IMG/VR virus record: IMGVR_UViG_3300021057_000274 | Coordinates: 248,001 to 312,000 of that record | Reading direction: 5' to 3' (one strand) | DNA: 64,000 nucleotides | In this document: positions 9,111-62,931 of the stretch, in pieces | Layout of the letters: each line of letters starts with the position of its first letter | Position numbering within the stretch: position 1 is the stretch's first letter | Notes under the pieces: generated by a model | What the model was told of the DNA's origin: nothing | Databases searched by the model: none | Seen by the model: only the letters and a program-made list of their open reading frames with translations | Position numbers and translations under genes: made by a program

Positions 9111-9116
9111 TAAATA
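9111..9116 (+). promoter_or_regulatory. Late promoter, 5 nt before the gp15 start codon
   Basis: TAAATA-ggttc-GTG, no Shine-Dalgarno. Confidence 0.6.
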
Positions 9117-9121
9117 GGTTC

Positions 9122-9883: not shown

Positions 9884-9903
9884 CCTGAAAATTCACTCCT
9901 AGA

Positions 9904-9909
9904 TAAATA
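9904..9909 (+). promoter_or_regulatory. Late promoter for tail tube gene
   Basis: TAAATA upstream of RBS AGGAG and ATG 9943. Confidence 0.65.
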
Positions 9910-9942
9910 CCCTCGCTACCACTTGGAGCACTAGGAGAACGA

Positions 9943-10539: not shown

Positions 10540-10555
10540 GTAAGGGAGGTCCCCG

Positions 10556-31995: not shown

Positions 31996-32193
31996 ATGAA
32001 AAAATACGAACAGCTCCAAACCCCCCGAGAGAAAGCGGCGCACCTCGAGGATCTCATGACTACTCTCTACAGCGGCCTGCGCGGCTGCTGTGGGCAGCTC
32101 CACGCGTACTCAGATAACCGCGAGCTCATCAAGCGCCTGCTCCAGGGAGAGCTAGAGCGCCAACAAGCCATCGCAAAGTGCAGAAGTACCTAG
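31996..32193 (+). CDS. Hypothetical protein
   Basis: ORF in operon. Confidence 0.45.
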   Translation: MKKYEQLQTPREKAAHLEDLMTTLYSGLRGCCGQLHAYSDNRELIKRLLQGELERQQAIAKCRST

Positions 32194-32717: not shown

Positions 32718-32961
32718 CTCAAACTACCGCGACAACTATGACGCGATCTTCGGCAAGAAGAAGCCAGAGGTGACCTATGAGCTCTGGCAAGATCATCCCG
32801 GGAGCAACTCCTTCACGTTCATCAGCGAGACGAACGAGTCGTCTAGACGCTCCCTCGCGCCAGACGCGATCCTCCTAACGAAGATCACGTCGTCGTCGTT
32901 CTACCGCGCGAATCAGCTCAAGAACTCCTTCCTCAAGGAGTACACGAAGGAGCACAAGTGA
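32698..32961 (+). CDS. Hypothetical protein
   Basis: Coupled ORF. Confidence 0.5.
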   Translation: MRSKPTNSNYRDNYDAIFGKKKPEVTYELWQDHPGSNSFTFISETNESSRRSLAPDAILLTKITSSSFYRANQLKNSFLKEYTKEHK

Positions 32962-34103
32962 AGGCCGCGATCGACCTGATCTGCCGCAAGCTCGCGTCGA
33001 GCGAGTACTCTCACCAGGTGAGCTGGGCTCACCTCAGGGCCAACCAGCTCCGCAACATCGCGAGAGAGAACCCCGGCTGCGGGATCCCTGAGACGATCGA
33101 GGTCCAGGACTTTGACGGCCCTCGCCACTCCCGCGACTGGTCAGAGTACGACGTCGTCTACATCTACCACGGGATGGACTACAAGCCAGGCCCGTACATC
33201 AACGTCTTCGACGGTTTGGTCGAGCACGCCGCCAAGTTCTTCGAGCGCCTGATCTGGCCGCAGCATCGCCACATCAAGTTCGTCTCGCTCGACATCGAGA
33301 TGCCACCCTACGGTCGTCTCTGTCGAGACAAGAAGGGTACCCGCTCTGCCTACTGGGCGAACGTCGACTGGAACGCGGTGCAAGCCAAGTGCGAAGCGAT
33401 CACCGAGGTCGTCCGCGACCCATGCAAGCACTTCGCGCCGGGCAAGTACCGACATCTCGTGATCGGCGACTCTCACGCGCACTCGGCCTACAAGGCTACC
33501 TCGATGGTTCTCCGCAAGGACGAGCGTACTCTCGCTGGCGTGCTGCGCAAGGGCATCGAGAACGAGATCAAGGAGTACGGCGGTTGGGACATGAGCGAGA
33601 TCGACTCGCTCACTTGTTACTGGGGAAACATCGACATCCGTCACCACCTCTGCCGCACCGCTGATCCGCTTCAGGCGACTCGCGACCTGCTCAAGACCTA
33701 TGAGGACGCGTTGCTCAAGTTGAATCGTCCGATCGAGCTCGTGACGATGCTACCGATCGAGGATGAGTCGCGCCCCCTCCCAAAGTCGGGCTATTACGGT
33801 GATCGCTCTGACAACAAAACGCCCTTCTTTGGCTCTCGCGCTGAGCGCATCAAGGTCATGACCGCCTTCAATGATCTCCTTCGCGAGATGGCTGCGAGAA
33901 ACTCAGGCTGGACGATCTACGAGTGGCCCAAGCTCTGGTACGAAATGGACGGCGTCGAGTTCATGGACACGATCATGGAGCGCCCACGCTCGGTGCATCT
34001 AGCGAGAAAGTACTATCGTTGGGACCTCCTCAACAACGTACCCAACCCGAACCACGCGCCCGCCGCTGTGCCTGTCCCAAAGAAGAGCCTCCTCGAGTTC
34101 TGA
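32958..34103 (+). CDS. SGNH/GDSL-fold protein, putative DNA-modification enzyme
   Basis: VIGDSHAH block I, GNIDIRHH block III, SVHL block V; ends KKSLLEF. Confidence 0.65.
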   Translation: MKAAIDLICRKLASSEYSHQVSWAHLRANQLRNIARENPGCGIPETIEVQDFDGPRHSRDWSEYDVVYIYHGMDYKPGPYINVFDGLVEHAAKFFERLIWPQHRHIKFVSLDIEMPPYGRLCRDKKGTRSAYWANVDWNAVQAKCEAITEVVRDPCKHFAPGKYRHLVIGDSHAHSAYKATSMVLRKDERTLAGVLRKGIENEIKEYGGWDMSEIDSLTCYWGNIDIRHHLCRTADPLQATRDLLKTYEDALLKLNRPIELVTMLPIEDESRPLPKSGYYGDRSDNKTPFFGSRAERIKVMTAFNDLLREMAARNSGWTIYEWPKLWYEMDGVEFMDTIMERPRSVHLARKYYRWDLLNNVPNPNHAPAAVPVPKKSLLEF

Positions 34104-34104
34104 G

Positions 34105-34503
34105 ATGAGCGCTCGGCTCTACAAGTCGCACACCTACGTCGATGACTACACGGTCGTCGTACATGCCACCGGGTTTGACTTGAACGACCACCCGGACCTG
34201 CAAAATGATCTCCACATCAAGTGCGAAGCTATCTTCACTAAGTCGTTTGCGATATTTGACGGCATCGGGATGCTTGAGAACCTTCACACCGCGGAGACCG
34301 CGAGGGCTCTCCTCGATCGGCTCTCTAGCATCTTGACGGAGCAGATGGGGATTGAGGTTAAGATCATTGACTTTCAAGCCTCTTTAGACTTGCTGCACAT
34401 GAGGAATCTCGCTTACTTCAAGGTCAGCATCGATCCAGAGGTCTATAAGAACGCCGGAGCTAAGAGGTTGCTTGAGCTCCTCTGTCAACCAGCTCAAGAA
34501 TAA
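34105..34503 (+). CDS. Hypothetical protein
   Basis: ORF in operon. Confidence 0.5.
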   Translation: MSARLYKSHTYVDDYTVVVHATGFDLNDHPDLQNDLHIKCEAIFTKSFAIFDGIGMLENLHTAETARALLDRLSSILTEQMGIEVKIIDFQASLDLLHMRNLAYFKVSIDPEVYKNAGAKRLLELLCQPAQE

Positions 34504-34716: not shown

Positions 34717-35859
34717 ATGTCTAAGAAAATTCGTGTCGCCGTAGCAGGCATCGGAAATTGCTTTTCCTCTCTCTATCAGGGTCTCGAGTTCTACAAGGAC
34801 ACCGACCCGGACAGCGGGATCATTCCGGGCGTGATGCACATGCGCATCGGTGGCTATCATCCGGCCGATATCCAGATCGTTGCGGCATTCGACGTCGATC
34901 GACGCAAGGTCGGTCGCCCCGTCGGCGAGGCGATCTTCGCTGCACCGAACTGCGCTCGCGTGTTCTGTCAGGATGTTCCGGACGGACCGATTGTGCAGAT
35001 GGGTCCGGTCATGGATGGGGTGTCGGATTACATGCAAGAGCAGCCAGAGAAGATCGGCTTTCGCGTCTCGAACGAGGAGCCGGTCAACATCGTTCAGGTT
35101 CTTCAAGATACGAAGGCAGACATTCTGATCAACTACCTCCCGGTCGGCTCCGAGACCGCCTCTAAGCATTACGCTCAGTGCGCGATCGCTGCTGGGGTCG
35201 CTTTCATGAATTGCATCCCGGTCTTCATCGCCTCTGATCCGGAGTGGGAGAAACGGTTCATCGAGGCTGGGCTTCCGATCATCGGCGATGACATGCGCAG
35301 CCAGTTCGGGGCGTCGATCATGTCGCAGATCCTCCAAGAGACCGCCTTCGATCGCGGCTGTGACGTGCTCTACCACCAGCAGATCAACATCGGGGGCAAC
35401 ACGGACTTCAACAACATGATGGTGCAAAGTCGGCTGAAGTCAAAGAAGATCTCGAAGGAGAACGTGATTCGCGCTCAGAACGACCTGCGCGGAATCCCGG
35501 TTGACCCCGACGCGCTCTTCGCCGGGCCCTCGACGTTCATCCCGTACCTCAAGGACAACAAGGTCGCGTACATCAATCACCGTCTGCTCGGGTTCGGCGG
35601 CGCTCCGATCGACATCGACGTCAAGCTCTCGGTGCAAGACTCCGAGAACTCGGCGGGGGTGGTGATCGACGCGGTGCGCTACCTCAAGGTCGCGAGAGAA
35701 GAGGGGATCGTCGGCGCTCTGCGCGGACCGTCGGCCTTCACCCAGAAGACCCCTCCACAGCAGATGCGCCTCAACGACGCGAAGGAGGAGTGTGACGCGT
35801 TCGCGAGGCGCGACCTGGCGGCGCTCAAGGCGGTCAACAAGTTCAAGAGCAAGATCTAA
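34717..35859 (+). CDS. ino1: myo-inositol-1-phosphate (inositol-3-phosphate) synthase, bacterial/archaeal type
   Basis: VAVAGIGNCFSSLYQG, VAAFDVD, NYLPVGSE, GDDMRSQFGA, NIGGNTDF, SKKISK, DSENSAG, KTPP. Confidence 0.93.
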   Translation: MSKKIRVAVAGIGNCFSSLYQGLEFYKDTDPDSGIIPGVMHMRIGGYHPADIQIVAAFDVDRRKVGRPVGEAIFAAPNCARVFCQDVPDGPIVQMGPVMDGVSDYMQEQPEKIGFRVSNEEPVNIVQVLQDTKADILINYLPVGSETASKHYAQCAIAAGVAFMNCIPVFIASDPEWEKRFIEAGLPIIGDDMRSQFGASIMSQILQETAFDRGCDVLYHQQINIGGNTDFNNMMVQSRLKSKKISKENVIRAQNDLRGIPVDPDALFAGPSTFIPYLKDNKVAYINHRLLGFGGAPIDIDVKLSVQDSENSAGVVIDAVRYLKVAREEGIVGALRGPSAFTQKTPPQQMRLNDAKEECDAFARRDLAALKAVNKFKSKI

Positions 35860-35870
35860 CCAAGGAATCA

Positions 35871-37097
35871 ATGAGCACCAACTCGATCTACAACTTCAAC
35901 GTCGGAGTACACAGCGCAGAGGAAGCGGCAGGCATGTCGATCCTGGCGATGCAGGAGCGCTTTCGCAAGCTCGGCGTCTCGTTCTTCAGCTGGGAGAAGG
36001 AGATGGTCGTTAACATGCCGAAGAAGCTCTTTCTCGACGAGGTGCTCAGGATCATCGAGGAGCTAGACGAGAGCATCAGCTACACCAACGTGATGGTGCT
36101 CTCGCCTGGCATCGTCGAGATAACGCTCTCGAAGCAACGGCCAGAGAGCATGCTCGAGACCCAGGACGAGCTTCGAGTCTACATCAAGCTCAACAGCTGG
36201 GAGTACTACGACGAGTACGGTGAGGAGACTCAGTTCCCCTTCGTCACCCAAAAGGACGAGATGGTCTGCGTCGCGAACATCGAGGTGATGGGACAGAGCT
36301 GGCTCGCCGAGATCTTCATCCCGAAGCTGCTCGAGTGCGTCAATCAGCACCGCCAGTCCGACAAGATCTCGCTCATCAAGTGGCTCTACTCGTCTCAGCA
36401 TGGCACCGCGAGCAAGGTCTTTCAGATTCGCAAGGACTGGGAGATCAACCCCGTCTACTACCCGTGGCTCAAGCAGCATCTCAGCGAGCTAAACATCGCT
36501 GGGGAGGAGAGCCTTCGTCCCTACTACCACGCCTTCCTCAAGAGCCAGTCACAGATCCTCGTGCTCTTCGGTGAACCTGGCACCGGCAAGACGTCGTTCA
36601 TCCGTGACATGATCTGCGAGATGGGACTCAACGCGCTCATCTCGTACGACCTCAAGGTGCTGACGTCGGATCACACGTTCATCGAGTACCTGACGAGCGA
36701 CATCTTCGACCTGATCGTGGTCGAGGACGCTGACGACCTGCTCACCTCCTCCCGGAGCGAGAACAACAAGGTCATCTCGAAGATCCTCAACGTCTCGGAC
36801 GGCATCATCAAGCTCCCCAAGAAAAAGATGATCTTCACGACGAACTTGCGCGACGTCAGCGAGATCGACAACGCGGTCTACCGTCTCGGTCGCTGCTTCG
36901 ACGTCGTTAACTTCAGAAAGCTCGACCACGTTGAGGCTCAGAGCGTCGCTGACGCGCTTGACATCAAGCTTCCAGAGAAGAAGGGCGACAGCTACGCATT
37001 GTCAGACCTCTTCTTCTTGAAGAACCTCGGGAACAGCGATGATCCGTTCGTCAAGCGCAACGAGGAGCGTCTCAAGAAGAAGCTAGGCTTCGTTTGA
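35871..37097 (+). CDS. AAA+ ATPase
   Basis: GEPGTGKTS, LIVVEDAD, ILNVSDG, IFTTN, RLGRCFD. Confidence 0.85.
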   Translation: MSTNSIYNFNVGVHSAEEAAGMSILAMQERFRKLGVSFFSWEKEMVVNMPKKLFLDEVLRIIEELDESISYTNVMVLSPGIVEITLSKQRPESMLETQDELRVYIKLNSWEYYDEYGEETQFPFVTQKDEMVCVANIEVMGQSWLAEIFIPKLLECVNQHRQSDKISLIKWLYSSQHGTASKVFQIRKDWEINPVYYPWLKQHLSELNIAGEESLRPYYHAFLKSQSQILVLFGEPGTGKTSFIRDMICEMGLNALISYDLKVLTSDHTFIEYLTSDIFDLIVVEDADDLLTSSRSENNKVISKILNVSDGIIKLPKKKMIFTTNLRDVSEIDNAVYRLGRCFDVVNFRKLDHVEAQSVADALDIKLPEKKGDSYALSDLFFLKNLGNSDDPFVKRNEERLKKKLGFV

Positions 37098-37693
37098 CGA
37101 TTCACAATCTCTTTCCGATCCCAATCGGCTCTTACAAGATCGGAAGAGAGCTGACGCTTGATGAGCTAAAGTATCTCGACGGCTTACTAAGACGACCGAA
37201 CGTCGGAAACGCTACCAGTTGCAGCTCAACGATCCTTGAGAGCCAGGAGCTGAGCGAGCTTACAAGGTTCATCCTCGGATCACTTAAGAGCTACTTCATC
37301 CAGGTCTACGACCCGCTCCACGACGTTAAGCTCAAGATCACCCAGAGCTGGTGCAACTACACGAAGCCCGGTCAGCATCACCACAAGCACAACCACGGCA
37401 ACAGCTTCATCTCAGGCGTGTTCTACGTCAAGGCCGACAAGATGATCGATAAGCTTTACTTTTATCAGGACGCGTATCAGCAACTCCAAATTCAGCCCAA
37501 AGTTTGGAATCTCTGGAACGCGCGCTCGTGGTGGCTAGAGGTAGGAGCTGGTGACTTACTCCTCTTCCCCTCTGCCTTGACCCACGAAGTAGCCGCGGTT
37601 GAGGGCACCGAAGAGCGAATCAGCATCTCCTTCAACACCTTCCCCATCGGAATCCTCGGGGACGAGAGAGATCTAACGCTGGTAAAAGTTTAG
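37094..37693 (+). CDS. 2OG-Fe(II) oxygenase (TIGR02466-like)
   Basis: SWCN...HHKHNHGNSFISGVFYV...GDLLLFPSALTHEV...RISISFN. Confidence 0.85.
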   Translation: MTIHNLFPIPIGSYKIGRELTLDELKYLDGLLRRPNVGNATSCSSTILESQELSELTRFILGSLKSYFIQVYDPLHDVKLKITQSWCNYTKPGQHHHKHNHGNSFISGVFYVKADKMIDKLYFYQDAYQQLQIQPKVWNLWNARSWWLEVGAGDLLLFPSALTHEVAAVEGTEERISISFNTFPIGILGDERDLTLVKV

Positions 37694-38470
37694 CAGAGCT
37701 TGAAAGAGCTTAGGTCTGTCGCACGCGTACATCCCAGCGCAGTTTAGGCAATTGTATTCAATCACCTTGAAGCTGCCGTCGGTCATCCGCACGAAGTCGA
37801 CAACGTAGTTTCGAGCTGGCGCGTAGTGAAGCTTGACGACGTTGAAGAACGACGTGACGTCTCGCACCTCGCTAGGCGTCAAGCGCTCGTAAGTGATCTT
37901 CGCTCCGATCTTGTAGACCGAAGAGGTGATAAGCTTGCCGTCAACGACGAAGTTGCGGTACTCCCTCTCCATCCCGTCGACGAGAGTTGCGCACAGCACT
38001 TGCTCGTCGTTCGGATGGTCGGAGAACGATGAGTCTTGGATCGACTTGCCAAAGATCGCGGCGTAGGGAGTTTGACCCTCCTCAACGATCGTGCCGGCGA
38101 ACGCTTTCAAGTCCCGCGTCGGCTTGATGAAGACGGGAGCAGTGACTGGCACGTCGCGAATCGTGCCGAAGCGCGCGAAGAAGGCGTGCGAGTTGAGGAG
38201 CAACTTTCCGAGGGCCTTGTGGTAGAAGGCCTGATCAAACGCGAGCGGGTCATAGTTCACGACGGCGCTGTGCGGAAGCACGCCGCGCTCCCGCATCTTC
38301 AGCATCTTCGTCGATCCGAGCATGATGACTCGGTCGTACTCGTAAAACTTCTCGAGCTCGACGATCTCGTCACTGAATGGGATTAACCCGAACCAGATCG
38401 GATCATGAACTCCGATCGACTGGAGCGCGAGCTGGTTCTCCATCAGCTCTTGCTCGCGCATGTGACTCAA
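37673..38470 (-). CDS. ATP-grasp protein (DUF4343/R2K-like)
   Basis: FIKPTRDLKAFAG, EYRNFVVDGKLITSSVY, YVVDF, VIEYN...AGMY. Confidence 0.8.
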   Translation of the reverse strand: MSHMREQELMENQLALQSIGVHDPIWFGLIPFSDEIVELEKFYEYDRVIMLGSTKMLKMRERGVLPHSAVVNYDPLAFDQAFYHKALGKLLLNSHAFFARFGTIRDVPVTAPVFIKPTRDLKAFAGTIVEEGQTPYAAIFGKSIQDSSFSDHPNDEQVLCATLVDGMEREYRNFVVDGKLITSSVYKIGAKITYERLTPSEVRDVTSFFNVVKLHYAPARNYVVDFVRMTDGSFKVIEYNCLNCAGMYACDRPKLFQALLNFYQR

Positions 38471-38489
38471 CTGAACTCCGAAGGTGATC

Positions 38490-38582
38490 TTAGGGATGTG
38501 ATTTTCTCCAGGGACACCAAACGGATGGCCATTGCGGATGACTAAAGATCGAGCGCTTGCAGTGCTTGCACACGGGGATCAT
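38490..38582 (-). CDS. Small Cys-rich peptide (30 aa, not in supplied ORF track)
   Basis: MIPVCKHCKRSIFSHPQWPSVWCPWRKSHP; ATG 5 nt after minus-strand TACAAT. Confidence 0.4.
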   Translation of the reverse strand: MIPVCKHCKRSIFSHPQWPSVWCPWRKSHP

Positions 38583-38587
38583 GAGAA

Positions 38588-38640
38588 ATTGTAACATCTC
38601 CGTCAACTATTGTACATCGCGTCAAGATCTATGTTAGAAT
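38588..38640. promoter_or_regulatory. Back-to-back sigma70-like promoters sharing palindromic TGTACA
   Basis: TGTACA at 38611-38616; TAGAAT at 38635-38640 (+) and TACAAT at 38588-38593 (-). Confidence 0.55.
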
Positions 38641-38646
38641 TTGACG

Positions 38647-39090
38647 ATGGTAGAGTTGAGAGATCTCGAGCTGAAAGATACAGCGGAGCTTTACGCGCTG
38701 ATCGAGATCTCGCGCAAGGATCTTCTCAATCTCTGGTGGGCGGAGTCAGCGACGTTCGAGTCGACAGCCCAGTTCATCGAGAACGCTAGACGGAGCTCGA
38801 ATCACGTCAAGGCGATCGTCGTTGACGGTCAGATCGCCGGCTGCATCTCTCTCATCGACATGCCAGACGGGAGCTTTCAGCTCGGGTACTGGTTAGGGAC
38901 TCCGCATCGCGGAAAGAGACACATTCAGCACGCGGTCGAGAAGATCAAGACCTTAGCAGAAGCGTACAGGCGTCAGATCATCGTGCGCATCAAGTCCAAG
39001 AACGTGAAGAGCCTGAGCGTCGTCAAGGGCGCAGGCTTCACGCATGTTGGCAACGACGGAGAGTGGACCTGGCACGTTTGGCGGCCGTAA
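38647..39090 (+). CDS. GNAT acetyltransferase (RimJ/RimL type)
   Basis: IAGCISL...LGYWLGTPHRGK...NVKSLSVVKGAGF. Confidence 0.85.
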   Translation: MVELRDLELKDTAELYALIEISRKDLLNLWWAESATFESTAQFIENARRSSNHVKAIVVDGQIAGCISLIDMPDGSFQLGYWLGTPHRGKRHIQHAVEKIKTLAEAYRRQIIVRIKSKNVKSLSVVKGAGFTHVGNDGEWTWHVWRP

Positions 39091-40232
39091 ACATTCTTCC
39101 CGACTTCAAGCAAGATCTGGATCGTAGCCTCATCCCGCAGATCCAGCGCTTCTGGACCAAGATCAACGAGCGTCAGCTCCACTTCATGGGAGTGCCAGGC
39201 TTTGAGACCTACGACACCGACGGAGATGAAGCTCTCGGGCGAGACGTCGAGTTCTTCCACTTCAGCATCTGCGCTGATGCCCGCATGCGCTACCTCGGAG
39301 AGAACTTCGTTCTCAACGATGATCAGCTCCTTGACCCCGTCAACAAGCTCTCTAACGCGGTCGTCGCGCACCTGTACGGCGGCCGTCGGATTTACTCGCT
39401 CTTCACGGGCGTCACTGACCCTCGCAAGGCGTACCTGGACTTTTCGCGAGTGGGAAGTGACCCTGACTACGTCAGGATGGTGCGTAGCAACGCTGAATAC
39501 GCGAAGCTACACGGTTTCAAGTTCTACGGCACAACGGAGCTACACACGTCTCTCCAGACTGCTGCGCGAAATTTCTGCCGAGACAAGTATGGTGATCCTG
39601 GCCGACCCGCAAGCAATGTCGACATTATCGAGTGGATCGCCTCCTGGCGCGACAAGGGGTTATTTGAAGCGCTTCTCGGGGCGACATCACTGGGAGAGAC
39701 CTTTGAGCACATCAAGTCCCTACCAGGAGTTGGCGCATACTACGGATACCACCTCGCCGTAGATTGCTCGCTCTTCCCGTTCACGAGATACCACCATGAC
39801 GAGCCGTTTTGCGTGCCCGGCGGCGGTTGCCAAACGACGTTGAAGATGCTCTTCCCGAGGCTCACCGCGTCGAAGAAGTTTCCCTTCGGCGAGGCGGTGG
39901 TCTGGATCGAGCAGAACCAGAAGGACCTGTTTCCGACGCTCCAGTTCCATCCGGCCCTTTGGAACATCGAGCGAGACGGGAAGAAGGTCTTTCCCTTCGA
40001 GCAGAACAAGCTGATGGTCTACGGTCTCGAGGTCGGGCTTTGCCAATTCGGAGTTTATTGCCACCTCAAGAAGAATCCTCACCTGATCGAGCGCCGCAAG
40101 GTCGGCGTCGATCCTGACCTGACGCCCCTCATCCTGCGAGAGCAGGGCGCGCCAGTTACCCCCGAGGAGCTGCGTGAGCTTCAGAGCGAAGCCGCGGCCC
40201 CGACGGCCACGAAGGGTCTCCTGGAGTTCTGA
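39063..40232 (+). CDS. aGPT-Pplase / amino-acid:DNA-transferase-like base hypermodification enzyme (HhH helical fold)
   Basis: IKSLPGVGAYYGYHLAVD HhH, VPGGGC loop, LEVGLCQFGVY; ends KGLLEF. Confidence 0.7.
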   Translation: MDLARLAAVNILPDFKQDLDRSLIPQIQRFWTKINERQLHFMGVPGFETYDTDGDEALGRDVEFFHFSICADARMRYLGENFVLNDDQLLDPVNKLSNAVVAHLYGGRRIYSLFTGVTDPRKAYLDFSRVGSDPDYVRMVRSNAEYAKLHGFKFYGTTELHTSLQTAARNFCRDKYGDPGRPASNVDIIEWIASWRDKGLFEALLGATSLGETFEHIKSLPGVGAYYGYHLAVDCSLFPFTRYHHDEPFCVPGGGCQTTLKMLFPRLTASKKFPFGEAVVWIEQNQKDLFPTLQFHPALWNIERDGKKVFPFEQNKLMVYGLEVGLCQFGVYCHLKKNPHLIERRKVGVDPDLTPLILREQGAPVTPEELRELQSEAAAPTATKGLLEF

Positions 40233-40432
40233 TGGGTCACTACTCTGAGCAGTACGAAGCTTCCGCTCGCGAGGAAGCGAAGCGCGAGAAGAAGCGTGCT
40301 CGACAGCAGCTGACGGCGATGGCGGAATTTCGCGACCAGCTGATCGGCAACATCGGTGCCGACGGCATCTCGCCGCGGCACCTGGACGCTTTTCAAGACA
40401 TGATGAACGAGACGAAGCTGCGCGCGAGATGA
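40232..40432 (+). CDS. Hypothetical protein
   Basis: TGATG coupled ORF. Confidence 0.5.
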   Translation: MGHYSEQYEASAREEAKREKKRARQQLTAMAEFRDQLIGNIGADGISPRHLDAFQDMMNETKLRAR

Positions 40433-40665
40433 AGCACAGCGAGCTTTTTTTAGACGTGTACATCAAGCCCGTCCAACCAGTCGAGTACTTTACCGTCTCG
40501 GTAGATGTCGGTGACGGCGAGGTGATCGTGCGAGATCTCACGATCTTGAAGAGCCGTAACGCAGATCTAACGCCAGAGCAGGAGAAGCTCTGGGAGATCT
40601 TCGCCTCCGCTGGATTCGTAGCCAGTCGCAAATTTTCAATTAACAAAGACCTCAAGATAGGATAA
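40429..40665 (+). CDS. Hypothetical protein
   Basis: Coupled ORF. Confidence 0.45.
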   Translation: MKHSELFLDVYIKPVQPVEYFTVSVDVGDGEVIVRDLTILKSRNADLTPEQEKLWEIFASAGFVASRKFSINKDLKIG

Positions 40666-40677
40666 AATCTAACAAAT

Positions 40678-41400
40678 ATGCTCACTGGCTCTTACTATAA
40701 GAAGGGCGAGGGGTTCGTGGATGTACCCCTTAAGCAACACAAGACCGGGCTCTACTTCCGTCCTGGCTCCCACGATCGCGCGGCGATCGTCGACTGTACC
40801 GGCGGGCGCGACTACGTCACCGTCAACTGCGCTGGGCACCGCGTCCTCGACCTGGGCGGCAACATCGGCGCGTTCATCTTCAAGGCCGCTAGGGAGGGAG
40901 CAGAGCGAGTACTCTCGTTCGAGCCCGAGCCCAGCAACTTCAAGGTGCTCCAGGCCAACCTCGAGCACGCGATCAAGCCGCTCAACAGCTCGACGATCGT
41001 CGAGGCTCGCCAGCAGGCGGTCGCCGACAAGCATGACAAGCTCGAGCTGATCGTCGGCGGCAGCTACAGCACGGGCACCCCGTCGCTGACCGCCAAGAAG
41101 GGCAAGGACAAGGTCGGCATCCTCGTTGACGTCGTGCCGTTCAAGGAGGTCTGCGAGGAGTTCAAGCCGACGCTCCTCAAGATGGACATTGAGGGCGCCG
41201 AGTACTCGTTCATCTTCGACGGCCTTCCGGAGTCGATCCGCGAGTTCGTCTTCGAGATCCACGGTCAGAACGCTCGCGAGAACGAGCTGATGCACAAGTG
41301 CTGGGAGATGTACACGAGGGACTGGGACGTCGTCTCACGCTTCGATCGCAAGTTCTTCGGTAAGACCCACCTGATCATCGCTCACCTCAAGCGGAAGTGA
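40678..41400 (+). CDS. FkbM-family SAM-dependent methyltransferase
   Basis: VLDLGGNIGAF, VLSFEPEPSNF, LLKMDIEGAEY. Confidence 0.88.
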   Translation: MLTGSYYKKGEGFVDVPLKQHKTGLYFRPGSHDRAAIVDCTGGRDYVTVNCAGHRVLDLGGNIGAFIFKAAREGAERVLSFEPEPSNFKVLQANLEHAIKPLNSSTIVEARQQAVADKHDKLELIVGGSYSTGTPSLTAKKGKDKVGILVDVVPFKEVCEEFKPTLLKMDIEGAEYSFIFDGLPESIREFVFEIHGQNARENELMHKCWEMYTRDWDVVSRFDRKFFGKTHLIIAHLKRK

Positions 41401-41633
41401 CCACGACGCCGATCCTCCCGACCGCGGGGGAGGAGATGACTGGGAATGAGCTGATCGCTCAGCTGCGTGAGCATCAGCTCACGCACAAGATCTGGGCAGA
41501 GTGGTTCGAAGCGCATCCGGAAGATCCTCGACAACACACCGAGGGAATCGGCGACGCGGTCTTCCATCGGCAGATCGAGGCGAAGTACTCAGAGATGATC
41601 CGCTGTGTGCAACGATTGATGAGTGAAGCCTGA
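41397..41633 (+). CDS. Hypothetical protein
   Basis: Coupled ORF. Confidence 0.5.
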   Translation: MTTTPILPTAGEEMTGNELIAQLREHQLTHKIWAEWFEAHPEDPRQHTEGIGDAVFHRQIEAKYSEMIRCVQRLMSEA

Positions 41634-42925
41634 TGCGCGTCGTGATCATCGGACAGCAGCTGAACCGCAACCACGCGGATCGGTTAAAGGGCGGCATTCA
41701 GACCTGTGAGCGCCTCCACGTCAAGCTGCTCAACGAGCTCGGGCACGAGATCCACTTCATCGCGGCCGCCGACACCGAACCCTTCACTCCCCACGCCAAG
41801 CTTCACCTCCTGGAGCTGCCGTCCGAAGAGACGCTCGGCGAGCTCTCGAGAGCTGACAAGGCTAAGGTCAGCCGCCAGAAGACCGTTGAGATCCGTGACA
41901 CGATCAGCGAGATTCGTCCTGACTTCATCATCAACCACAGCTACTCGAGCTCGCACGTCCGACTGCTCGCTGATCACGTCGAGCAGGGAATTCCGGGAAT
42001 CTTCTTCAACCACCAAAATCCAGTCGTCGCGAGCGACATCAGTCTGATCGCCAAGCTCGAGCAGTACATTCGCATGACTAAGCTTGGAGGAGCGCTTGTC
42101 TGCGTCTCTCCGTTCTCCCGTGACCTCTGGCGGAGGGCGATCCGCAAGCGCCTCAAGTCAGCGTCGTTCGCCTTCGTCGAGGAGGAGATGATCGACCAGG
42201 TTTATAACATGGTCTGCCCGCCAGCGTATATCGACCAGGTTAAGGTGTGGCGCTCTGATCCGAGCAACATCTTCGTGATCATCAGTCGCCCGACCAGGGA
42301 GAAGAACGTCGCTGGCTTTCTTGAGGTCTACGAGAGATCGCGTCTTAAGAATCCGGTGGTCATCTTTCTCGCTGTCGGCGGTGACCTCGAGAGCAACGAG
42401 TACTGGTTAGCCGAGCTGAAACCGATCATCGAGAGGCTCAAGGAGCAAGGTGTTCCGATCAAGGTGCGATCGAACGCTCCGCGCGCTGACGTCCTCTCTG
42501 CGCTTGAGACGGCCGCCTTCAACGTCATCCCGTGGGTCGACGAGTCGGCCTCGATCGTCGCGCTTGAGGGGGCTCAGTACGGCACGATCCCGCTCATGAT
42601 GTCGAAGACGCGTGAGGACGGATCACTGACCGGTCACGCGGCCCAATCACTCATCCAGCTCAACTCCCCCTACCTCGAGATGCTCCCAGCAGGTCGCAAG
42701 CATCAAGAGCGCGCGGCAGCCAGGCTTCGCGACACGGTTCAAAGCTACGAGATGAGTTCGCCCGACGAGCAGTACAAGATCAGAAACTATTTGCGAGATC
42801 GTACTCTACGAAAGCACTCGCTTACGTGCCGAGTTAATGATCTTGCTGACATCATGGCTGAGGTGAGATTTCGCGTGAGCTCGCATGCGACGATTCCAGC
42901 CATCGTACGTTTATTGGAGATGTGA
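41633..42925 (+). CDS. GT-B fold glycosyltransferase (GT4-like)
   Basis: MRVVII...GGIQ...LGHEIHF, VCVSPF, ISRPTREKN, ESASIVALEGAQYGTIP; ends IVRLLEM. Confidence 0.8.
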   Translation: MRVVIIGQQLNRNHADRLKGGIQTCERLHVKLLNELGHEIHFIAAADTEPFTPHAKLHLLELPSEETLGELSRADKAKVSRQKTVEIRDTISEIRPDFIINHSYSSSHVRLLADHVEQGIPGIFFNHQNPVVASDISLIAKLEQYIRMTKLGGALVCVSPFSRDLWRRAIRKRLKSASFAFVEEEMIDQVYNMVCPPAYIDQVKVWRSDPSNIFVIISRPTREKNVAGFLEVYERSRLKNPVVIFLAVGGDLESNEYWLAELKPIIERLKEQGVPIKVRSNAPRADVLSALETAAFNVIPWVDESASIVALEGAQYGTIPLMMSKTREDGSLTGHAAQSLIQLNSPYLEMLPAGRKHQERAAARLRDTVQSYEMSSPDEQYKIRNYLRDRTLRKHSLTCRVNDLADIMAEVRFRVSSHATIPAIVRLLEM

Positions 42926-43095
42926 TGACTTTTGATTACGGCCTCATGGCGCAAACGGTGAAAGCTTTCTCAGACGTGATGGAGCAGATCCAGAAATCTG
43001 AGCAGTGTTCTACCGCGATTCGGGTCGGTGCGCTCCAAGCTCAAGCTGGTCTTACTCCGCTGATGAGGGCGATCCTGGAAGAGTATAAGAAGTGA
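42925..43095 (+). CDS. Small hypothetical protein (56 aa, not in supplied track)
   Basis: MTFDYGLMAQ...ILEEYKK fills the gap with coupled start and stop. Confidence 0.5.
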   Translation: MTFDYGLMAQTVKAFSDVMEQIQKSEQCSTAIRVGALQAQAGLTPLMRAILEEYKK

Positions 43096-43475
43096 ACTCG
43101 TTCGACATCGACGGTGTTATCTACATCAGCGCTGAGTTAGGCGGAATCTTTCCAGGACCGCATGACGTGATCATCACCGGGCGCAGCTTCGAGGAGGCTC
43201 CTGAGACGATCGCGATGCTCACTAAGCGTGGCATCTCGAACTACGTCTACTTCAACCCGCTCCCGTTCGCTCAAAAGACTCGGGTATCGTCTGGAGAGCA
43301 CAAGGCCCGCATCTTAAATAATCTAAGAGAACAAGGCATCAAGGTCGGCATTCACTTCGAGGATGACCCGATCCAGGCTCAAGTGATCGCTGATCAAGCC
43401 CCACACGTCGCGATCGTTCTCCTCCAGCATGACCTGACAGAGAGGGAAAATGTCCGTCACCCGATGCCAGACTGA
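43092..43475 (+). CDS. Capless HAD-superfamily phosphatase
   Basis: SFDIDGVI motif I, ITGRS motif II, HKARIL, HFEDDP motif IV. Confidence 0.8.
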   Translation: MNSFDIDGVIYISAELGGIFPGPHDVIITGRSFEEAPETIAMLTKRGISNYVYFNPLPFAQKTRVSSGEHKARILNNLREQGIKVGIHFEDDPIQAQVIADQAPHVAIVLLQHDLTERENVRHPMPD

Positions 43476-43513: not shown

Positions 43514-44149
43514 ATGATCCCAGATCTTCCCGAAAATGGCATTCTCATGCCTAAGATGGTCAACCGGTTTCGTGTCACTTTTCATCGATGTCACAACCTC
43601 AAGCGCGTCGCTGAGGGGCTCAGCCTTCAGGTTCTCGACGTCTCCCTGCCGTCCGTTGATCGGCTCCTCTCCACCTCGCGGAGTCGAGGTAAGAAGGTCT
43701 ACGGGCTCGAGACCGAGGAGGGGGCTCTAACCCTCACGTTTGAGGATGACCTCCAGTCTCGCGCGATCACGGCGATTTATGACGAGCTGATCGTTGATGA
43801 GGGAAACAGCTTCACCGTTCGCGTCGACTTCTTTAACGGCAACGGAGACGTGACCGAGACGTATGAGTTTAGAGGATCAGTCGGACCGATCACCGGCCCG
43901 ATCTTTGATTATTCTGGCGGTGACTCAGGAAATCGCTCCGCCTCGATCAGGTTTCCGAGCTATGTGAACACGACAACCGACGCGCTCAGCAAAGAAACGC
44001 TCGCTCTCATGAAGTTGATCTCGACCGCTGAGCTTAATTACGGTTGGGGTGAGAAGAGGCCGGGGGTAGTGCGCCGTAGCTTGAGCATCAACGTCGGGAA
44101 CGCCTTCACTCACTCCATCGTCACCAAGCGTCCGACGGAGGCGAAATGA
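43514..44149 (+). CDS. Tail-tube (gp19) paralog with C-terminal extension
   Basis: ILMPKMVNRFRVTF, LSLQV, LTLTFEDD, VTETYEF align with ILHPRQKNRWRVIF, LSLQL, CTLTVEDD, VTETWKY of 9943..10539. Confidence 0.7.
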   Translation: MIPDLPENGILMPKMVNRFRVTFHRCHNLKRVAEGLSLQVLDVSLPSVDRLLSTSRSRGKKVYGLETEEGALTLTFEDDLQSRAITAIYDELIVDEGNSFTVRVDFFNGNGDVTETYEFRGSVGPITGPIFDYSGGDSGNRSASIRFPSYVNTTTDALSKETLALMKLISTAELNYGWGEKRPGVVRRSLSINVGNAFTHSIVTKRPTEAK

Positions 44150-45354
44150 GCTTGAAGTGGGGAACGATCGTTCCGCTCATCGGCGGGCTCACCTTGGCTG
44201 GAAAGCGAGCGACCGGCCAGGACCCAAACTTCCTCCTGACATATACGCCGTTCGGAGAGAACGAGAAGAACGTGCGCGCCTACTTCCCGAACGTTCCCTA
44301 TCACCAGCTCGACACCGAGGACCGCGGCGGCTTCGACGTCGCGGCGAACAGAGACGTTGACTTCGTTCAGGCCCTCTGTCCCTGCGCCGGACTCTCGCTG
44401 CTGAGCTCAGGCTCCCCCGAGCAGCGCGCTAAGCAAAACTACTGGATGCTCGAGACCGCCAAGTTCATGACGGGCGAGCTTCGTCCGCGGGTCTTCTGGG
44501 GCGAGAACGCTCCGGGTCTCTATAGCAACACCGGCGAGCACGTGCGTAACGAGCTCCGCCAGATCGGGGAGAGGAACGGCTACTCGTTCTCCGTCTACGC
44601 GACGTCAACTCACTTCCACGGAATTCCTCAGACCCGCAAGCGCACGTTCTACTTCTTCTGGCGTGACGGTGAGGCGCCGGTGATGGAGTACTACCGAAAG
44701 CCTGTCAAGAACTTCACCGAGTACATGCGTGAGGTGCCGAAGGACTCGATTCACCACACCGCCGACGACATCCAGGCGGCGCGTGACACTCTCAACACCA
44801 ACCCGTTCATCATGTTCCTCCAGGAGAAGCATGACGGCAAGGGCATCGAGAAGATGCGCGAGTGGCTGGTGCGAAAGGACATGAAGAGCTTCACCCTCAA
44901 CACTTACCTGTTGCTCAGCGAGCAGTTCGAGGAGTGCATGGACTGGCTGAAGCAGCGCGGCCACGACAAGCACCTTCGTCTCGCTCAAAAGGTCTGGGAG
45001 AAGGTGACCTCGAAGGGCGGCTTCTGGGACGGCAGCTTCCCGATGTATCGCGGCGACCTGATGTTCGCGACCCTCATCTCTCGGACGCTCTACGCGATTC
45101 ACCCTGAGGAGGAGCGCGTTCTGACGACACGCGAGATGATGCATCTGATGGGGATGCCGCATGACCTGCCGTTGGTGACGGGCGGCTTGAATCACATCTG
45201 CCAGAACGTGCCGGTGTCGACGGGCGCTGACATGACTAACGAGGTGATCGCTTACCTGAGGGGCGAGCGGGAGAGCAGCGGGGCGCGGTTCACGATGCAG
45301 AGCAACATCACCCAGCGCATTGACCACAGCGAGTCGGCGCTGCTAAGCTTTTAG
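44146..45354 (+). CDS. C5 DNA cytosine methyltransferase-like protein
   Basis: CPCAGLS (motif IV), GENAPG (VI), IPQTRKRTF (VIII), LTTREMMHLMGMP (IX), CQNVPV (X); ends ALLSF. Confidence 0.85.
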   Translation: MSLKWGTIVPLIGGLTLAGKRATGQDPNFLLTYTPFGENEKNVRAYFPNVPYHQLDTEDRGGFDVAANRDVDFVQALCPCAGLSLLSSGSPEQRAKQNYWMLETAKFMTGELRPRVFWGENAPGLYSNTGEHVRNELRQIGERNGYSFSVYATSTHFHGIPQTRKRTFYFFWRDGEAPVMEYYRKPVKNFTEYMREVPKDSIHHTADDIQAARDTLNTNPFIMFLQEKHDGKGIEKMREWLVRKDMKSFTLNTYLLLSEQFEECMDWLKQRGHDKHLRLAQKVWEKVTSKGGFWDGSFPMYRGDLMFATLISRTLYAIHPEEERVLTTREMMHLMGMPHDLPLVTGGLNHICQNVPVSTGADMTNEVIAYLRGERESSGARFTMQSNITQRIDHSESALLSF

Positions 45355-62893: not shown

Positions 62894-62923
62894 ATTCCTA
62901 GCTCTTCCAGAGTGTGTTAGAAT
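62891..62923 (+). promoter_or_regulatory. TAAAT-N20-GTTAGAAT promoter before dCMP deaminase
   Basis: Same spacing as 34501 and 46459. Confidence 0.6.
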
Positions 62924-62931
62924 TTCACTCT

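What the first reader, a model, noticed from the sequence alone, without database searches (positions are those of the whole stretch)
34717..43475. Phage-encoded myo-inositol synthesis: Ino1 plus a candidate inositol-phosphate phosphatase
Seen: full-length Ino1 with NAD-binding and catalytic Lys motifs, and a capless HAD phosphatase directly downstream of the glycosyltransferase module. No CTP:inositol-phosphate cytidylyltransferase or phosphatidylinositol synthase is in the window. The E. coli-like class Ia RNR hints at a proteobacterial host, and many Proteobacteria lack Ino1, which would explain carrying it (inference).
Basis: partly seen in the sequence, partly recalled or inferred. Interest (0 to 1): 0.6.

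Follow-up and report, generated by a model that had tools for sequence, protein, structure and literature searches.

The report
Inositol cassette inside phage DNA-modification operon
A jumbo phage carries an inositol-phosphate synthase and a tiny phosphatase that travel together in hundreds of phages, almost always inside gene clusters that chemically decorate phage DNA, so the inositol is probably raw material for a new kind of DNA decoration rather than a general metabolite.

Summary
Both genes are real. Window 34717-35859 encodes a full-length Ino1 whose catalytic residues are conserved. Window 43092-43475 encodes a 127-aa capless HAD phosphatase with all four HAD motifs.

In 80 distinct viral loci seeded with the HAD alone, Ino1 lies within 1 kb upstream in 70 of the 74 loci with room upstream. 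Start and stop codons often overlap. The other four share this window's split layout.

In 79 of 80 loci the pair sits inside a DNA base-hypermodification operon, of three kinds:
- TET/JBP, amino-acid:DNA transferase and P-loop kinase.
- dUMP-hydroxymethylase-like, dCMP deaminase, 5-hmdU DNA kinase, an SGNH-fold protein and a C5-methyltransferase-like protein (this window's type).
- 7-deazaguanine genes.

The 7 kb between Ino1 and HAD here holds the 5-hmdU DNA kinase plus tailoring enzymes.

The 389-kb genome has no CDP-alcohol transferase, inositol-phosphate cytidylyltransferase-type enzyme or IMPase.

Best reading (inferred, about 0.5): the cassette supplies a cyclitol that is attached to activated 5-hydroxymethyl-uracil in DNA. 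Free inositol synthesis remains the main rival. No paper in the searchable library links Ino1 to DNA modification.

The parts
32958..34103 (+). 'F17' protein, 381 aa. It has an N-terminal Rossmann-like domain and a C-terminal SGNH/GDSL-fold domain. It is a constant partner of the 5-hmdU DNA kinase and a candidate new DNA-modifying transferase or esterase.
   Evidence: No Pfam hit. It matches phrog_13881 and the N-terminal half of phrog_17781, whose other half matches the kinase. The AF2 model has pLDDT 89. SGNH folds match at Z 11-12 over residues 160-368. GDSH 170-173, G223, N224 and H347 are invariant or nearly so in 27 homologues. It is not related to AADT (hhalign probability 0.1). Homologues sit beside Ino1-HAD-HMUDK in 51 loci.
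34105..34503 (+). 132-aa ORF of unknown function between F17 and Ino1.
   Evidence: No Pfam, NCBIfam or PHROG hit. No homologue in the fetched loci.
34717..35859 (+). Ino1, a myo-inositol-1-phosphate (inositol-3-phosphate) synthase homologue of 380 aa.
   Evidence: Homologues are found in 19 GenBank phage records, 31 IMG/VR loci by the Ino1 query, and more than 120 protein clusters at 72% identity or above.
35871..37097 (+). AAA-type ATPase, 408 aa. Lineage-specific insert.
   Evidence: PF00004 at 39.6 bits and phrog_14322. The only homologue in the fetched loci is in L111, also upstream of the kinase.
37094..37693 (+). 2OG-Fe(II) oxygenase of the PF13759/TIGR02466 type, 199 aa. Possible tailoring enzyme.
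   Evidence: PF13759 at 83.5 bits, TIGR02466 at 75.8 bits and phrog_81.
37673..38470 (-). ATP-grasp ligase of the R2K clade, 265 aa. Possible tailoring enzyme.
   Evidence: PF18299 at 69.4 bits and PF14243 at 59.5 bits.
38641..39090 (+). GNAT acetyltransferase, 149 aa. Possible tailoring enzyme.
   Evidence: PF13302 at 48.2 bits.
39063..40232 (+). 5-hydroxymethyl-dU DNA kinase (5-HMUDK), 389 aa. It activates 5-hmdU in DNA for substitution.
   Evidence: PF18723 HMUDK_hel at 48.2 bits against a cut-off of 25. Homologues are in 59 fetched loci, usually directly after the HAD. Its function is taken from PMC8989533.
40678..41400 (+). FkbM-family methyltransferase, 240 aa. Possible O-methylation of the appended group.
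   Evidence: PF05050 at 55.9 bits. Homologues lie between TET/JBP and AADT, or after the HAD, in 10 loci.
41633..42925 (+). GT4 (GT-B fold) glycosyltransferase, 430 aa.
   Evidence: PF13439 at 30.7 bits, plus weaker GT1 and GT4 models. There is no PDB sequence hit. Homologues precede the HAD in the split-type loci L019/L020 and L111.
43092..43475 (+). Capless (C0) HAD phosphatase, 127 aa. It is the constant partner of Ino1.
   Evidence: The family has 503 clusters, none of them annotated. Relatives are encoded on 370 IMG/VR contigs.
43514..44149 (+). 211-aa ORF of unknown function.
   Evidence: No family hit.
44146..45354 (+). C5-pyrimidine methyltransferase-like protein, 402 aa. It is a conserved member of the HMUDK-type cluster.
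   Evidence: PF00145 at 55.6 bits. The PC motif (79-80), ENA (120-122), QxRxR (162-166) and QNVP (353-356) are invariant in 18 homologues. Homologues follow F17 in 29 loci.
62914..63486 (+). dCMP deaminase. It probably supplies dUMP for 5-hmdU synthesis.
   Evidence: PF00383 at 71 bits. It is homologous to the deaminase that directly precedes Ino1 in type-B loci. A ThyA-like protein 49% identical to the type-B one lies outside the window, at genome C1:8902-9570.

Best explanation
Ino1 and the mini-HAD form a two-gene 'cyclitol supply' cassette that belongs to a post-replicative DNA hypermodification pathway.

Shown:
- Both proteins look catalytically competent.
- They are inherited together.
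- They are wedged, often with overlapping start and stop codons, between the enzymes that make, activate and substitute 5-hydroxymethyl-pyrimidines in DNA.

Inferred mechanism:
1. The phage makes 5-hmdU DNA using dCMP deaminase and a ThyA-like dUMP hydroxymethylase. In sister lineages a TET/JBP oxygenase does this instead.
2. The 5-hmdU DNA kinase phosphorylates the hydroxymethyl group.
3. Ino1 turns host glucose-6-phosphate into inositol-3-phosphate.
4. A transferase lets a ring hydroxyl attack the exocyclic C5-methylene and form an ether. In sister lineages the transferase is AADT. Here it is probably the SGNH-fold F17 protein, the C5-methyltransferase-like protein, or both.
5. The HAD removes the phosphate. 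It may act on free inositol phosphate beforehand. Alternatively it may act on the DNA-bound group afterwards, which its capless, Pnkp-like build would suit.
6. In this phage the GT4 glycosyltransferase, FkbM methyltransferase, GNAT, ATP-grasp ligase and 2OG oxygenase would then elaborate the appended group.

The likely benefit is protection of phage DNA from host nucleases.
For: Pairing of Ino1 and HAD:
- HAD homologues lie beside Ino1 in Moby, Cr30 and RP13 and in about 26 of 31 Ino1-seeded loci.
- In the HAD-seeded census, 70 of 74 loci with room upstream have Ino1 within 1 kb upstream. The other four share this window's split layout.
- Start and stop codons overlap in L013 (Ino1, HAD, kinase) and in L037 (Ino1, HAD, HMUDK, F17).

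Context:
- 79 of 80 distinct loci have DNA-modification markers within 8 kb. 44 are HMUDK/F17 type, 28 are TET/AADT/P-loop-kinase type and 7 are QueC/DpdA type.
- Pfam identifies these neighbours: Tet_JBP, ADDT and Ploopntkinase3, HMUDK, and QueC (GenBank annotation).
- On the Ino1 tree the three contexts are interleaved, with at least 16 changes. The association has therefore been kept or re-made many times.
- The cultured carriers fit. Cr30 has Tet_JBP at 74 bits and ADDT at 181 bits. RP13 has HMUDK at 162 bits. Moby has Ino1-HAD between FolE and QueC/DpdA/QueE.
- One locus has a divergent mini-HAD fused to QueC directly after Ino1.

Chemistry precedent:
- The ViI transferase adds the serine side-chain hydroxyl to the exocyclic methylene of phosphorylated 5-hmdU (PMC8989533).
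- A small HAD is proposed to dephosphorylate a sugar phosphate that feeds DNA arabinosylation in phage DLP3 (PMC13326640).

No alternative sink:
- The whole genome has no PI synthase or CDP-alcohol transferase, no NTP_transf_3 and no IMPase.
- All 14 control genomes already have an IMPase.
Against: - No enzyme has been shown to use inositol as a nucleophile on DNA, and no chemical data exist for any of these phages.
- Type-D phages keep Ino1-HAD although they lack HMUDK and ADDT (positive control). These include the complete genomes of Moby and of a 168-kb and an 88-kb contig. The pair is therefore either also used with 7-deazaguanine chemistry or useful on its own.
- The region is a variable island in T4-like genomes, so co-location could partly reflect shared position rather than shared function.
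- Many loci are related metagenomic fragments and are not independent.
- Context classes were assigned by tblastn best hits.
- The tree is a quick, midpoint-rooted one.
- MIPS homologues can make other cyclitols. The second-best PDB hit is Ari2, a five-membered-cyclitol-phosphate synthase.
Confidence: 0.5

Rival explanations
1. One reading: Ino1 and HAD simply make free myo-inositol in the infected cell as an auxiliary metabolic function. Possible uses are as an osmolyte, for the cell envelope, or in host take-over, in hosts that lack Ino1. Their place in DNA-modification islands would then be positional coincidence.
For: - The pair is self-sufficient for glucose-6-P to inositol.
- The E. coli and Caulobacter controls lack PF01658.
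- Type-D phages without thymidine-hypermodification kinases or transferases keep the pair.
- No recognisable inositol-using transferase is present.
Against: - 79 of 80 loci place the pair inside modification operons, flanked on both sides and often translationally coupled.
- The context changes type at least 16 times on the Ino1 tree, yet it is always a DNA-modification context.
- All 14 control genomes already have an IMPase, so the obligatory HAD is unexplained.
- The HAD is a capless, Pnkp/lipin-like type.
Confidence: 0.25
2. The HAD is a nucleic-acid phosphatase, and its tie to Ino1 is indirect. It might remove phosphate from unreacted phosphorylated 5-hmdU, or from 3'-phosphate DNA ends, as the T4 Pnkp phosphatase domain does.
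For: - The best structural matches are T4 Pnkp 3'-phosphatase (Z 12.3) and Pnkp1 (Z 12.2).
- It hits phrog_415, 'polynucleotide kinase'.
- In types A and B it directly precedes a DNA-base kinase.
Against: - The HAD follows Ino1 even where no such kinase exists (type D).
- In this window it is separated from the kinase but still present.
- Co-occurrence with Ino1 is complete, whereas co-occurrence with kinases is not.
- Identity to Pnkp is only 12%.
Confidence: 0.1
3. In this window's lineage the pathway follows mycothiol-like logic on a small molecule. Ino1 makes inositol-3-P, the GT4 enzyme glycosylates it as MshA does, and the HAD directly downstream dephosphorylates the product as MshA2 does. 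The ATP-grasp and GNAT enzymes then add to it. The product may or may not be attached to DNA afterwards.
For: - In the split-type loci the HAD has moved from behind Ino1 to behind the GT4 gene (window, L019/L020, L111).
- Ino1's best NCBIfam model is the mycothiol-type INO1.
- GNAT and a ligase are present.
- That MshA is a GT4 enzyme using inositol-3-P, followed by a phosphatase, is established knowledge recalled from memory. A paper notes that phage DNA glycosyltransferases resemble MshA structurally.
Against: - The GT4 protein has no sequence hit to MshA or to any PDB chain and no NCBIfam hit.
- Most loci have Ino1-HAD without any GT4.
- The extra enzymes are unique to this window among the fetched loci.
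Confidence: 0.1
4. The Ino1 homologue does not make myo-inositol phosphate. It makes another cyclitol phosphate from another sugar phosphate, as the five-membered-cyclitol-phosphate synthase Ari2 does.
For: - The second-best solved relative is Ari2, 6K96, E 2e-59. In that alignment it shares the same conserved Lys/Asp positions.
- The TIGR03450 equivalog cut-off is not reached.
Against: The protein is much closer to M. tuberculosis Ino1 (339 bits) than to Ari2 (205 bits).
Confidence: 0.05

Closest known systems
Mycobacterium tuberculosis Ino1 (PDB 1GR0), a short bacterial/archaeal-type myo-inositol-1-phosphate synthase
   Same: Same length class. It aligns end to end (E 4.5e-100). The Rossmann motif, the SKK.SK stretch and the Lys/Asp positions are conserved.
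   Different: It scores below the NCBIfam equivalog cut-off (366.7 against 638). It is encoded by a phage. Its partner is a HAD rather than an IMPase. Its context is DNA modification, not mycothiol or PI synthesis.
Annotated phage Ino1 genes (Caulobacter phage Cr30 gp121, Stenotrophomonas Menderavirus such as Moby gp039, Ralstonia phage RP13 ORF125)
   Same: Homologues at 42-63% identity. Each has the same small HAD nearby and DNA-modification genes around it.
   Different: In those records the HAD is 'hypothetical'. The Ps15 paper lists Ino1 only as a bacteria-like gene and reads the neighbouring genes as tRNA queuosine genes. No link to DNA modification is made. Here Ino1 and HAD are split by a 7-kb insert.
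Thymidine hypermodification pathways of phages ViI, M6, SP10 and PhiW-14 (5-HMUDK plus AADT/aGPT-Pplase; PMC8989533)
   Same: A 5-hmdU DNA kinase is present. Sister loci have AADT and TET/JBP. There is a precedent for a hydroxyl nucleophile, O-serinyl-thymidine.
   Different: The known pathways use amino acids or polyamines from the cell pool and carry no Ino1. This genome has no AADT. It has instead an SGNH-fold protein and a C5-methyltransferase-like protein as constant partners.
T4 polynucleotide kinase/phosphatase, C-terminal HAD 3'-phosphatase domain (PDB 5UJ0, 1LTQ)
   Same: Best structural match: Z 12.3, rmsd 2.5 A, 108 residues. It is capless and has the DxDG(T/V) and (S/T)GR motifs.
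   Different: Identity is 12%. There is no fused kinase domain. It is strictly linked to Ino1.
Sugar-supply branch of the arabinosyl-5-hydroxycytosine pathway in phages DLP3 and RB69 (PMC13326640)
   Same: The phage encodes its own small pathway to make the group put on DNA, including a small HAD proposed to dephosphorylate a sugar phosphate.
   Different: That pathway goes on through a kinase and a nucleotidyltransferase to an NDP-sugar used by glycosyltransferases. No nucleotidyltransferase of the PF12804 type is found here, and the product is a carbocyclic polyol.
IMPase family (SuhB/ImpA, PF00459), the usual inositol-monophosphate phosphatase
   Same: It would catalyse the step proposed for the HAD.
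   Different: Unrelated fold. It is absent from this genome but present in all 14 control genomes.

Membership tests
myo-inositol-1-phosphate synthase (MIPS/Ino1, EC 5.5.1.4) | Catalytic domain PF01658 above the gathering score | tested here: met
   76.6 bits against a cut-off of 27. The genome search gives 79.3 bits.
myo-inositol-1-phosphate synthase (MIPS/Ino1, EC 5.5.1.4) | Full-length two-domain architecture with an N-terminal NAD-binding Rossmann motif | tested here: met
   It aligns to 1GR0 over residues 2-362 and to TIGR03450 over 5-362 of 380. G11, G13 and C15 are invariant.
myo-inositol-1-phosphate synthase (MIPS/Ino1, EC 5.5.1.4) | Conserved active-site Lys/Asp residues | tested here: met
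   D192, K282, D308 and K344 align with Mtb D197, K284, D310 and K346 and are invariant in 68 phage sequences. That these four are essential in Mtb Ino1 is recalled from memory and could not be confirmed in the library.
myo-inositol-1-phosphate synthase (MIPS/Ino1, EC 5.5.1.4) | NCBIfam equivalog score (TIGR03450, mycothiol-type INO1) | tested here: not met
   366.7 bits against a cut-off of 638. It is a homologue but is not assigned as an equivalog.
myo-inositol-1-phosphate synthase (MIPS/Ino1, EC 5.5.1.4) | Converts glucose-6-phosphate to inositol-3-phosphate | not testable with these tools
   Needs an enzyme assay. Ari2 (6K96) shows that homologues can make other cyclitols.
HAD superfamily phosphatase | Four catalytic motifs: DxDx(T/V), S/T, K, (E/D)DD | tested here: met
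   D5, D7, G8 and V9; T29, G30 and R31; K71; E90, D91 and D92. All are invariant or conserved in at least 90% of 31 sequences.
HAD superfamily phosphatase | Rossmannoid HAD core fold | tested here: met
   The model has pLDDT 92. HAD structures fill the top of both fold searches.
HAD superfamily phosphatase | Pfam HAD model above the gathering score | tested here: not met
   PF00702 scores 19.3 bits against 26.4. The family carries no precomputed Pfam domain.
IMPase-type inositol monophosphatase (PF00459) | IMPase fold and motifs | tested here: not met
   The genome has no PF00459 match. The candidate phosphatase has a HAD fold. If it does this job it is an analogue, not a member.
T4 Pnkp-type polynucleotide 3'-phosphatase | HAD phosphatase domain joined to a P-loop polynucleotide kinase and acting on DNA or RNA ends | tested here: inconclusive
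   Structural similarity is Z 12.3. There is no fused kinase. A separate P-loop or 5-hmdU kinase gene follows the HAD in most loci. The substrate was not testable.
5-hmdU-based thymidine hypermodification cluster | 5-hmdU DNA kinase present | tested here: met
   PF18723 at 48.2 bits at 39063-40232.
5-hmdU-based thymidine hypermodification cluster | A route to 5-hmdU (dUMP hydroxymethylase or T-dioxygenase) | tested here: inconclusive
   A ThyA-like gene at genome C1:8902-9570 is 49% identical to the one next to Ino1 in type-B loci (PF00303 at 40.4 bits). A dCMP deaminase lies at 62914-63486. There is no Tet_JBP. Hydroxymethylase versus methylase specificity cannot be read from sequence here.
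5-hmdU-based thymidine hypermodification cluster | AADT/aGPT-Pplase transferase | tested here: not met
   The genome has no PF18724 (positive control). F17 is unrelated to AADT. A different transferase must act if the pathway is complete.
5-hmdU-based thymidine hypermodification cluster | Modified thymidine in virion DNA | not testable with these tools
   Needs nucleoside LC-MS.
Mycothiol-type MshA/MshA2 steps | GT4 enzyme recognisably related to MshA | tested here: not met
   There are only generic GT4/GT1 Pfam hits, with no NCBIfam hit and no PDB sequence hit.

The most novel reading that the evidence does not exclude
These phages carry a carbocyclic polyol on their DNA. This would be myo-inositol, further methylated, glycosylated or acylated in some lineages, ether-linked to the C5-methyl of thymine, and possibly joined to a 7-deazaguanine in Menderavirus-type phages. 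It would be made by an Ino1-HAD supply cassette together with previously unrecognised transferases (the SGNH-fold F17 protein and/or a C5-methyltransferase-like enzyme that attacks C6). The plain inositol adduct would have the same mass as the base-J nucleoside, so it could have been mistaken for a hexose.
Probability: 0.4. Interest if true: 0.9.

Novelty: new variant of a known kind. Interest (0 to 1): 0.75.

Why it matters
- Phage DNA hypermodifications known so far append amino acids, polyamines or sugars. A cyclitol would be a new chemical class of natural DNA modification, with an ether bond that glycosidases cannot cut.
- The cassette is common. At least 370 IMG/VR contigs and about 500 protein clusters carry the HAD alone, and the family is entirely unannotated.
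- It occurs in cultured phages of tractable hosts: Cr30 on Caulobacter, Menderavirus on Stenotrophomonas and RP13 on Ralstonia. The idea can therefore be tested directly by nucleoside mass spectrometry and knock-outs.
- It points to two candidate new DNA-modifying enzyme families: the SGNH-fold F17 protein and a divergent C5-methyltransferase-like family.
- It gives a function to a large family of 'hypothetical' mini-HAD proteins.
- It corrects GenBank annotations. In Cr30 the 'SNF2' protein is a TET/JBP oxygenase. The 'small terminase' clusters with a P-loop kinase family, although its own Pfam hits are weak.
- Even if the inositol stays free, an obligatory Ino1-HAD pair in hundreds of phages is an unexplained auxiliary pathway.

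Tried and rejected
- Megablast of the region against GenBank phages found no match.
- PDB sequence searches gave nothing useful for the HAD (only a designed TIM barrel), for F17 or for GT4.
- F17 was tested as a divergent AADT and rejected (hhalign probability 0.1).
- The whole genome has no Tet_JBP, ADDT, IMPase, CDP-alcohol transferase or NTP_transf_3. The Tet_JBP and first ADDT searches had no positive control genome. ADDT was later validated on Cr30 and three contigs.
- Rfam found no family in the window.
- Promoter- and terminator-like sites around the genes are no more frequent than in shuffled sequence.
- The IMG/VR 'provirus' label was checked. GC is uniform at 0.55-0.61 and there are 48 tRNA genes and T4-like core genes. 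No host flank was identified, so the host could not be named.
- The Ari2 papers and the Mtb Ino1 mutagenesis papers are not in the library. Residues that discriminate G6P-using from F6P-using enzymes could therefore not be checked.
- Only one HAD-QueC fusion was found. Its closest relative is an ordinary QueC.
It was rebuilt without them.
It was not run, and no claim of binding is made.
- Two paper searches failed on forbidden characters.

Full report
**Observation.** The coordinates of the finding are the outer limits of two real ORFs.

Window 34717-35859 (+) encodes a 380-aa protein.
- It hits Pfam PF01658 (Inos-1-P_synth) at 76.6 bits against a cut-off of 27.
- It aligns end to end with NCBIfam TIGR03450 at 366.7 bits. 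This is below the equivalog cut-off of 638.
- Its best solved relative is M. tuberculosis Ino1, 1GR0, E 4.5e-100.
- The residues that align with Mtb D197, K284, D310 and K346 are D192, K282, D308 and K344. They are invariant in 68 phage homologues that are 42-82% identical to it, as are the SKK.SK stretch and N228/D230.
- That those four residues are essential in the Mtb enzyme is my recollection. I could not confirm it in the paper library.

Window 43092-43475 (+) encodes a 127-aa protein that starts at a GTG just after an in-frame stop.
- It carries all four HAD motifs: FDIDGV, ITGR, K71 and EDD. These are invariant or nearly so in 31 homologues.
- Its model has pLDDT 92.
- Structural searches place it nearest the capless T4 Pnkp 3'-phosphatase domain (Z 12.3, rmsd 2.5 A, 108 residues). 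Next come Pnkp1, the lipin/LNS2 phosphatases and class-B acid phosphatases. The ESM Atlas look-alikes agree.
- Pfam's HAD model is below threshold.

**The genome.** The window is bases 248001-312000 of a 389,331-bp virus record.
- GC content is uniform and there are 48 tRNA genes.
- T4-like core genes are present: TerL, gp32, UvsX-like, UvsW and class I RNR.
- It is a jumbo T4-like phage. I saw no host flank despite the 'provirus' label.

**The pair is a conserved cassette.**
- tblastn of the window's proteins against the three groups of GenBank phages that carry Ino1 showed the small HAD within a few genes of Ino1 in all three. These are Stenotrophomonas Menderavirus, Caulobacter Cr30 and Ralstonia RP13.
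- In 31 IMG/VR loci found with Ino1, the HAD follows Ino1 directly wherever the contig allows.
- The converse test was seeded with the HAD alone. It found relatives on 370 viral contigs, of which 80 were fetched.
- Among 80 loci with distinct HAD DNA, 74 have room upstream. Ino1 lies within 1 kb upstream in 70 of them. The other four have this window's split layout.
- Start and stop codons overlap in L013 (Ino1 10001-11140, HAD 11137-11514, kinase 11511-12065).
- They also overlap in L037 (Ino1 6731-8008, HAD 8001-8396, HMUDK 8393-9559, F17 9559-10596).
- The HAD family has 503 clusters in the large protein collection. All are 'hypothetical' and none has a Pfam domain.

Pfam scans of the conserved neighbours gave:
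- Tet_JBP, the amino-acid:DNA transferase ADDT and P-loop nucleotide kinase 3;
- the 5-hmdU DNA kinase;
- ThyA-like proteins and dCMP deaminase;
- QueC. DpdA and QueE are identified only by Moby's GenBank annotation.

Four layouts recur:
- A: TET/JBP, sometimes FkbM, AADT, Ino1, HAD, P-loop kinase.
- B: ThyA-like, dCMP deaminase, Ino1, HAD, 5-HMUDK, 'F17', C5-methyltransferase-like.
- C: this window's type. F17, Ino1, inserts, 5-HMUDK, GT4, HAD, C5-methyltransferase-like.
- D: Ino1, HAD and QueC within 7-deazaguanine clusters.

Of the 80 loci, 79 have such markers within 8 kb: 44 of B/C type, 28 of A type and 7 of D type.

In this window:
- The 7.2 kb between Ino1 and HAD holds an AAA ATPase, a 2OG oxygenase, an ATP-grasp ligase on the opposite strand, a GNAT, the 5-HMUDK, an FkbM methyltransferase and a GT4 glycosyltransferase.
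- F17 lies just upstream of Ino1 and the C5-methyltransferase-like gene just downstream of the HAD.
- F17, Ino1, HMUDK, HAD and the C5-methyltransferase-like protein are shared with many loci. The oxygenase, ligase and GNAT were seen only here.
- A dCMP deaminase (62914-63486) and a ThyA-like gene at genome position 8902-9570 match the type-B genes.

**Independence of the association.** On a quick maximum-likelihood tree of 68 Ino1 sequences, the layouts are interleaved and need at least 16 changes.
- Ino1-HAD has therefore stayed put while the flanking chemistry was swapped on both sides, or it has moved between modification islands, many times.
- Caveats: the tree is a quick search with a midpoint root, layout labels depend on contig length and tblastn best hits, and many contigs are related.

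**Partner proteins.**
- F17 has no Pfam or PDB sequence match and is not an AADT.
- Its model (pLDDT 89) has a C-terminal SGNH/GDSL hydrolase fold (Z 11-12). GDSH, G223, N224 and H347 are invariant or nearly so.
- One PHROG family matches F17 over its N-terminal half and the kinase over its other half.
- The C5-methyltransferase-like family keeps the catalytic Pro-Cys, ENV-like, QxRxR and motif-X residues.
- The characterised transferases of ViI and M6 work by Cys attack on C6, loss of phosphate and capture of the exocyclic methylene by an amine or a hydroxyl (PMC8989533).
- A C5-methyltransferase-like enzyme could plausibly do the same where AADT is absent. This is inference only.

**What the inositol is for.**
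- The genome encodes no CDP-alcohol phosphatidyltransferase, no NTP_transf_3-type cytidylyltransferase and no IMPase. The control genomes ring for all three. The lipid and CDP-inositol routes are therefore not phage-encoded.
- All 14 control genomes have an IMPase. The invariable HAD is thus not needed just to free inositol.
- The HAD's capless build resembles enzymes that act on polymers or membrane-bound substrates.
- The serine-hydroxyl precedent and the DLP3 precedent of a small HAD in a sugar-supply branch for DNA glycosylation (PMC13326640) make the following chemically reasonable. Inositol, or inositol phosphate later trimmed by the HAD, would be the group attached to activated 5-hmdU.
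- The FkbM methyltransferase and GT4 enzyme fit tailoring of a polyol.
- In split-type loci the HAD sits behind GT4. This recalls the MshA then MshA2 order of mycothiol synthesis (recalled knowledge). However, the GT4 protein shows no specific similarity to MshA.

**Evidence against.**
- Type-D phages include three complete or near-complete genomes. They keep Ino1-HAD although they lack HMUDK and ADDT (positive control).
- In those phages the pair either serves 7-deazaguanine chemistry or has value on its own.
- A single locus with a divergent mini-HAD fused to QueC directly after Ino1 hints at the first option. The fusion is rare.
- No chemical data exist.
- I therefore give the DNA-modification reading about 0.5, free inositol synthesis about 0.25, and the rest to the other rivals.

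**Comparison with what is known.**
- Phage Ino1 genes are already annotated in GenBank.
- The Ps15 paper lists Ino1 only as a bacteria-like acquisition and interprets the neighbouring genes as tRNA queuosine genes.
- Papers on thymidine hypermodification, phage TET and T-dioxygenases and DNA glycosylation do not mention Ino1. Where 'inositol' appears, it refers only to structural resemblance of glycosyltransferases to MshA or PimA.
- Within the searchable library, the Ino1-HAD cassette and its tie to DNA hypermodification are not described.
- I rate it a new variant of a known kind of system.

**Steps not run.** No binding claim is made.

Noticed in passing
window 32178-32717 (+): An Acb1 anti-CBASS phosphodiesterase homologue (PF23474, 89.6 bits) lies just upstream of the modification cluster. 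Homologues hold the same position in L016, L019/L020 and L065.
   Followed up: partly
L002 (Caulobacter phage Cr30) 4709-6037 and 12964-13602: These look like GenBank mis-annotations. The 'putative SNF2 DNA repair protein' gp129 hits Tet_JBP at 74.3 bits. The 'terminase small subunit' gp114 clusters with the P-loop nucleotide kinase 3 family. gp123 is a strong ADDT match (180.7 bits).
   Followed up: yes
L036 526-1686 (+): A 386-aa protein fuses a divergent mini-HAD (FDYDGT, HTAR, DD motifs) to QueC, directly after Ino1. Only this one instance was found.
   Followed up: partly
genome G000 C1:123181-123255 (outside the window): ARAGORN calls a tRNA with anticodon CTA (an amber reader, labelled tRNA-Pyl) among the genome's 48 tRNA genes. 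I did not look into whether the phage uses amber suppression.
   Followed up: no
window 58107-58868 (+): A Thg1-like tRNA-His guanylyltransferase homologue (PF04446, 91.6 bits), which is unusual for a phage.
   Followed up: no
window 53405-56055 (+): An adjacent MoxR-like AAA_3 ATPase and a DUF2201_N putative metallopeptidase-domain protein, of unknown role.
   Followed up: no
genome G000 as a whole: IMG/VR labels the 389-kb record 'provirus'. However, GC is uniform at 0.55-0.61 and T4-like replication and packaging genes are present. It looks like a free jumbo phage genome.
   Followed up: partly
genome G000 C1:50158-51036 and C1:8902-9570: There are two thymidylate-synthase-family genes. One is canonical-looking (318 bits). 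The other is short and divergent (about 40 bits) and matches the ThyA-like gene found next to Ino1 in type-B loci, so it is a candidate dUMP hydroxymethylase. The first search flagged a TGA inside the extended frame of the second.
   Followed up: partly
window 43092-43475, residues 111-127: The HAD's C-terminal tail (consensus DLVEKENVRH) is highly conserved but modelled with low confidence (pLDDT 50-74). It may close over the active site or contact a partner, so 'capless' may be only partly true.
   Followed up: no
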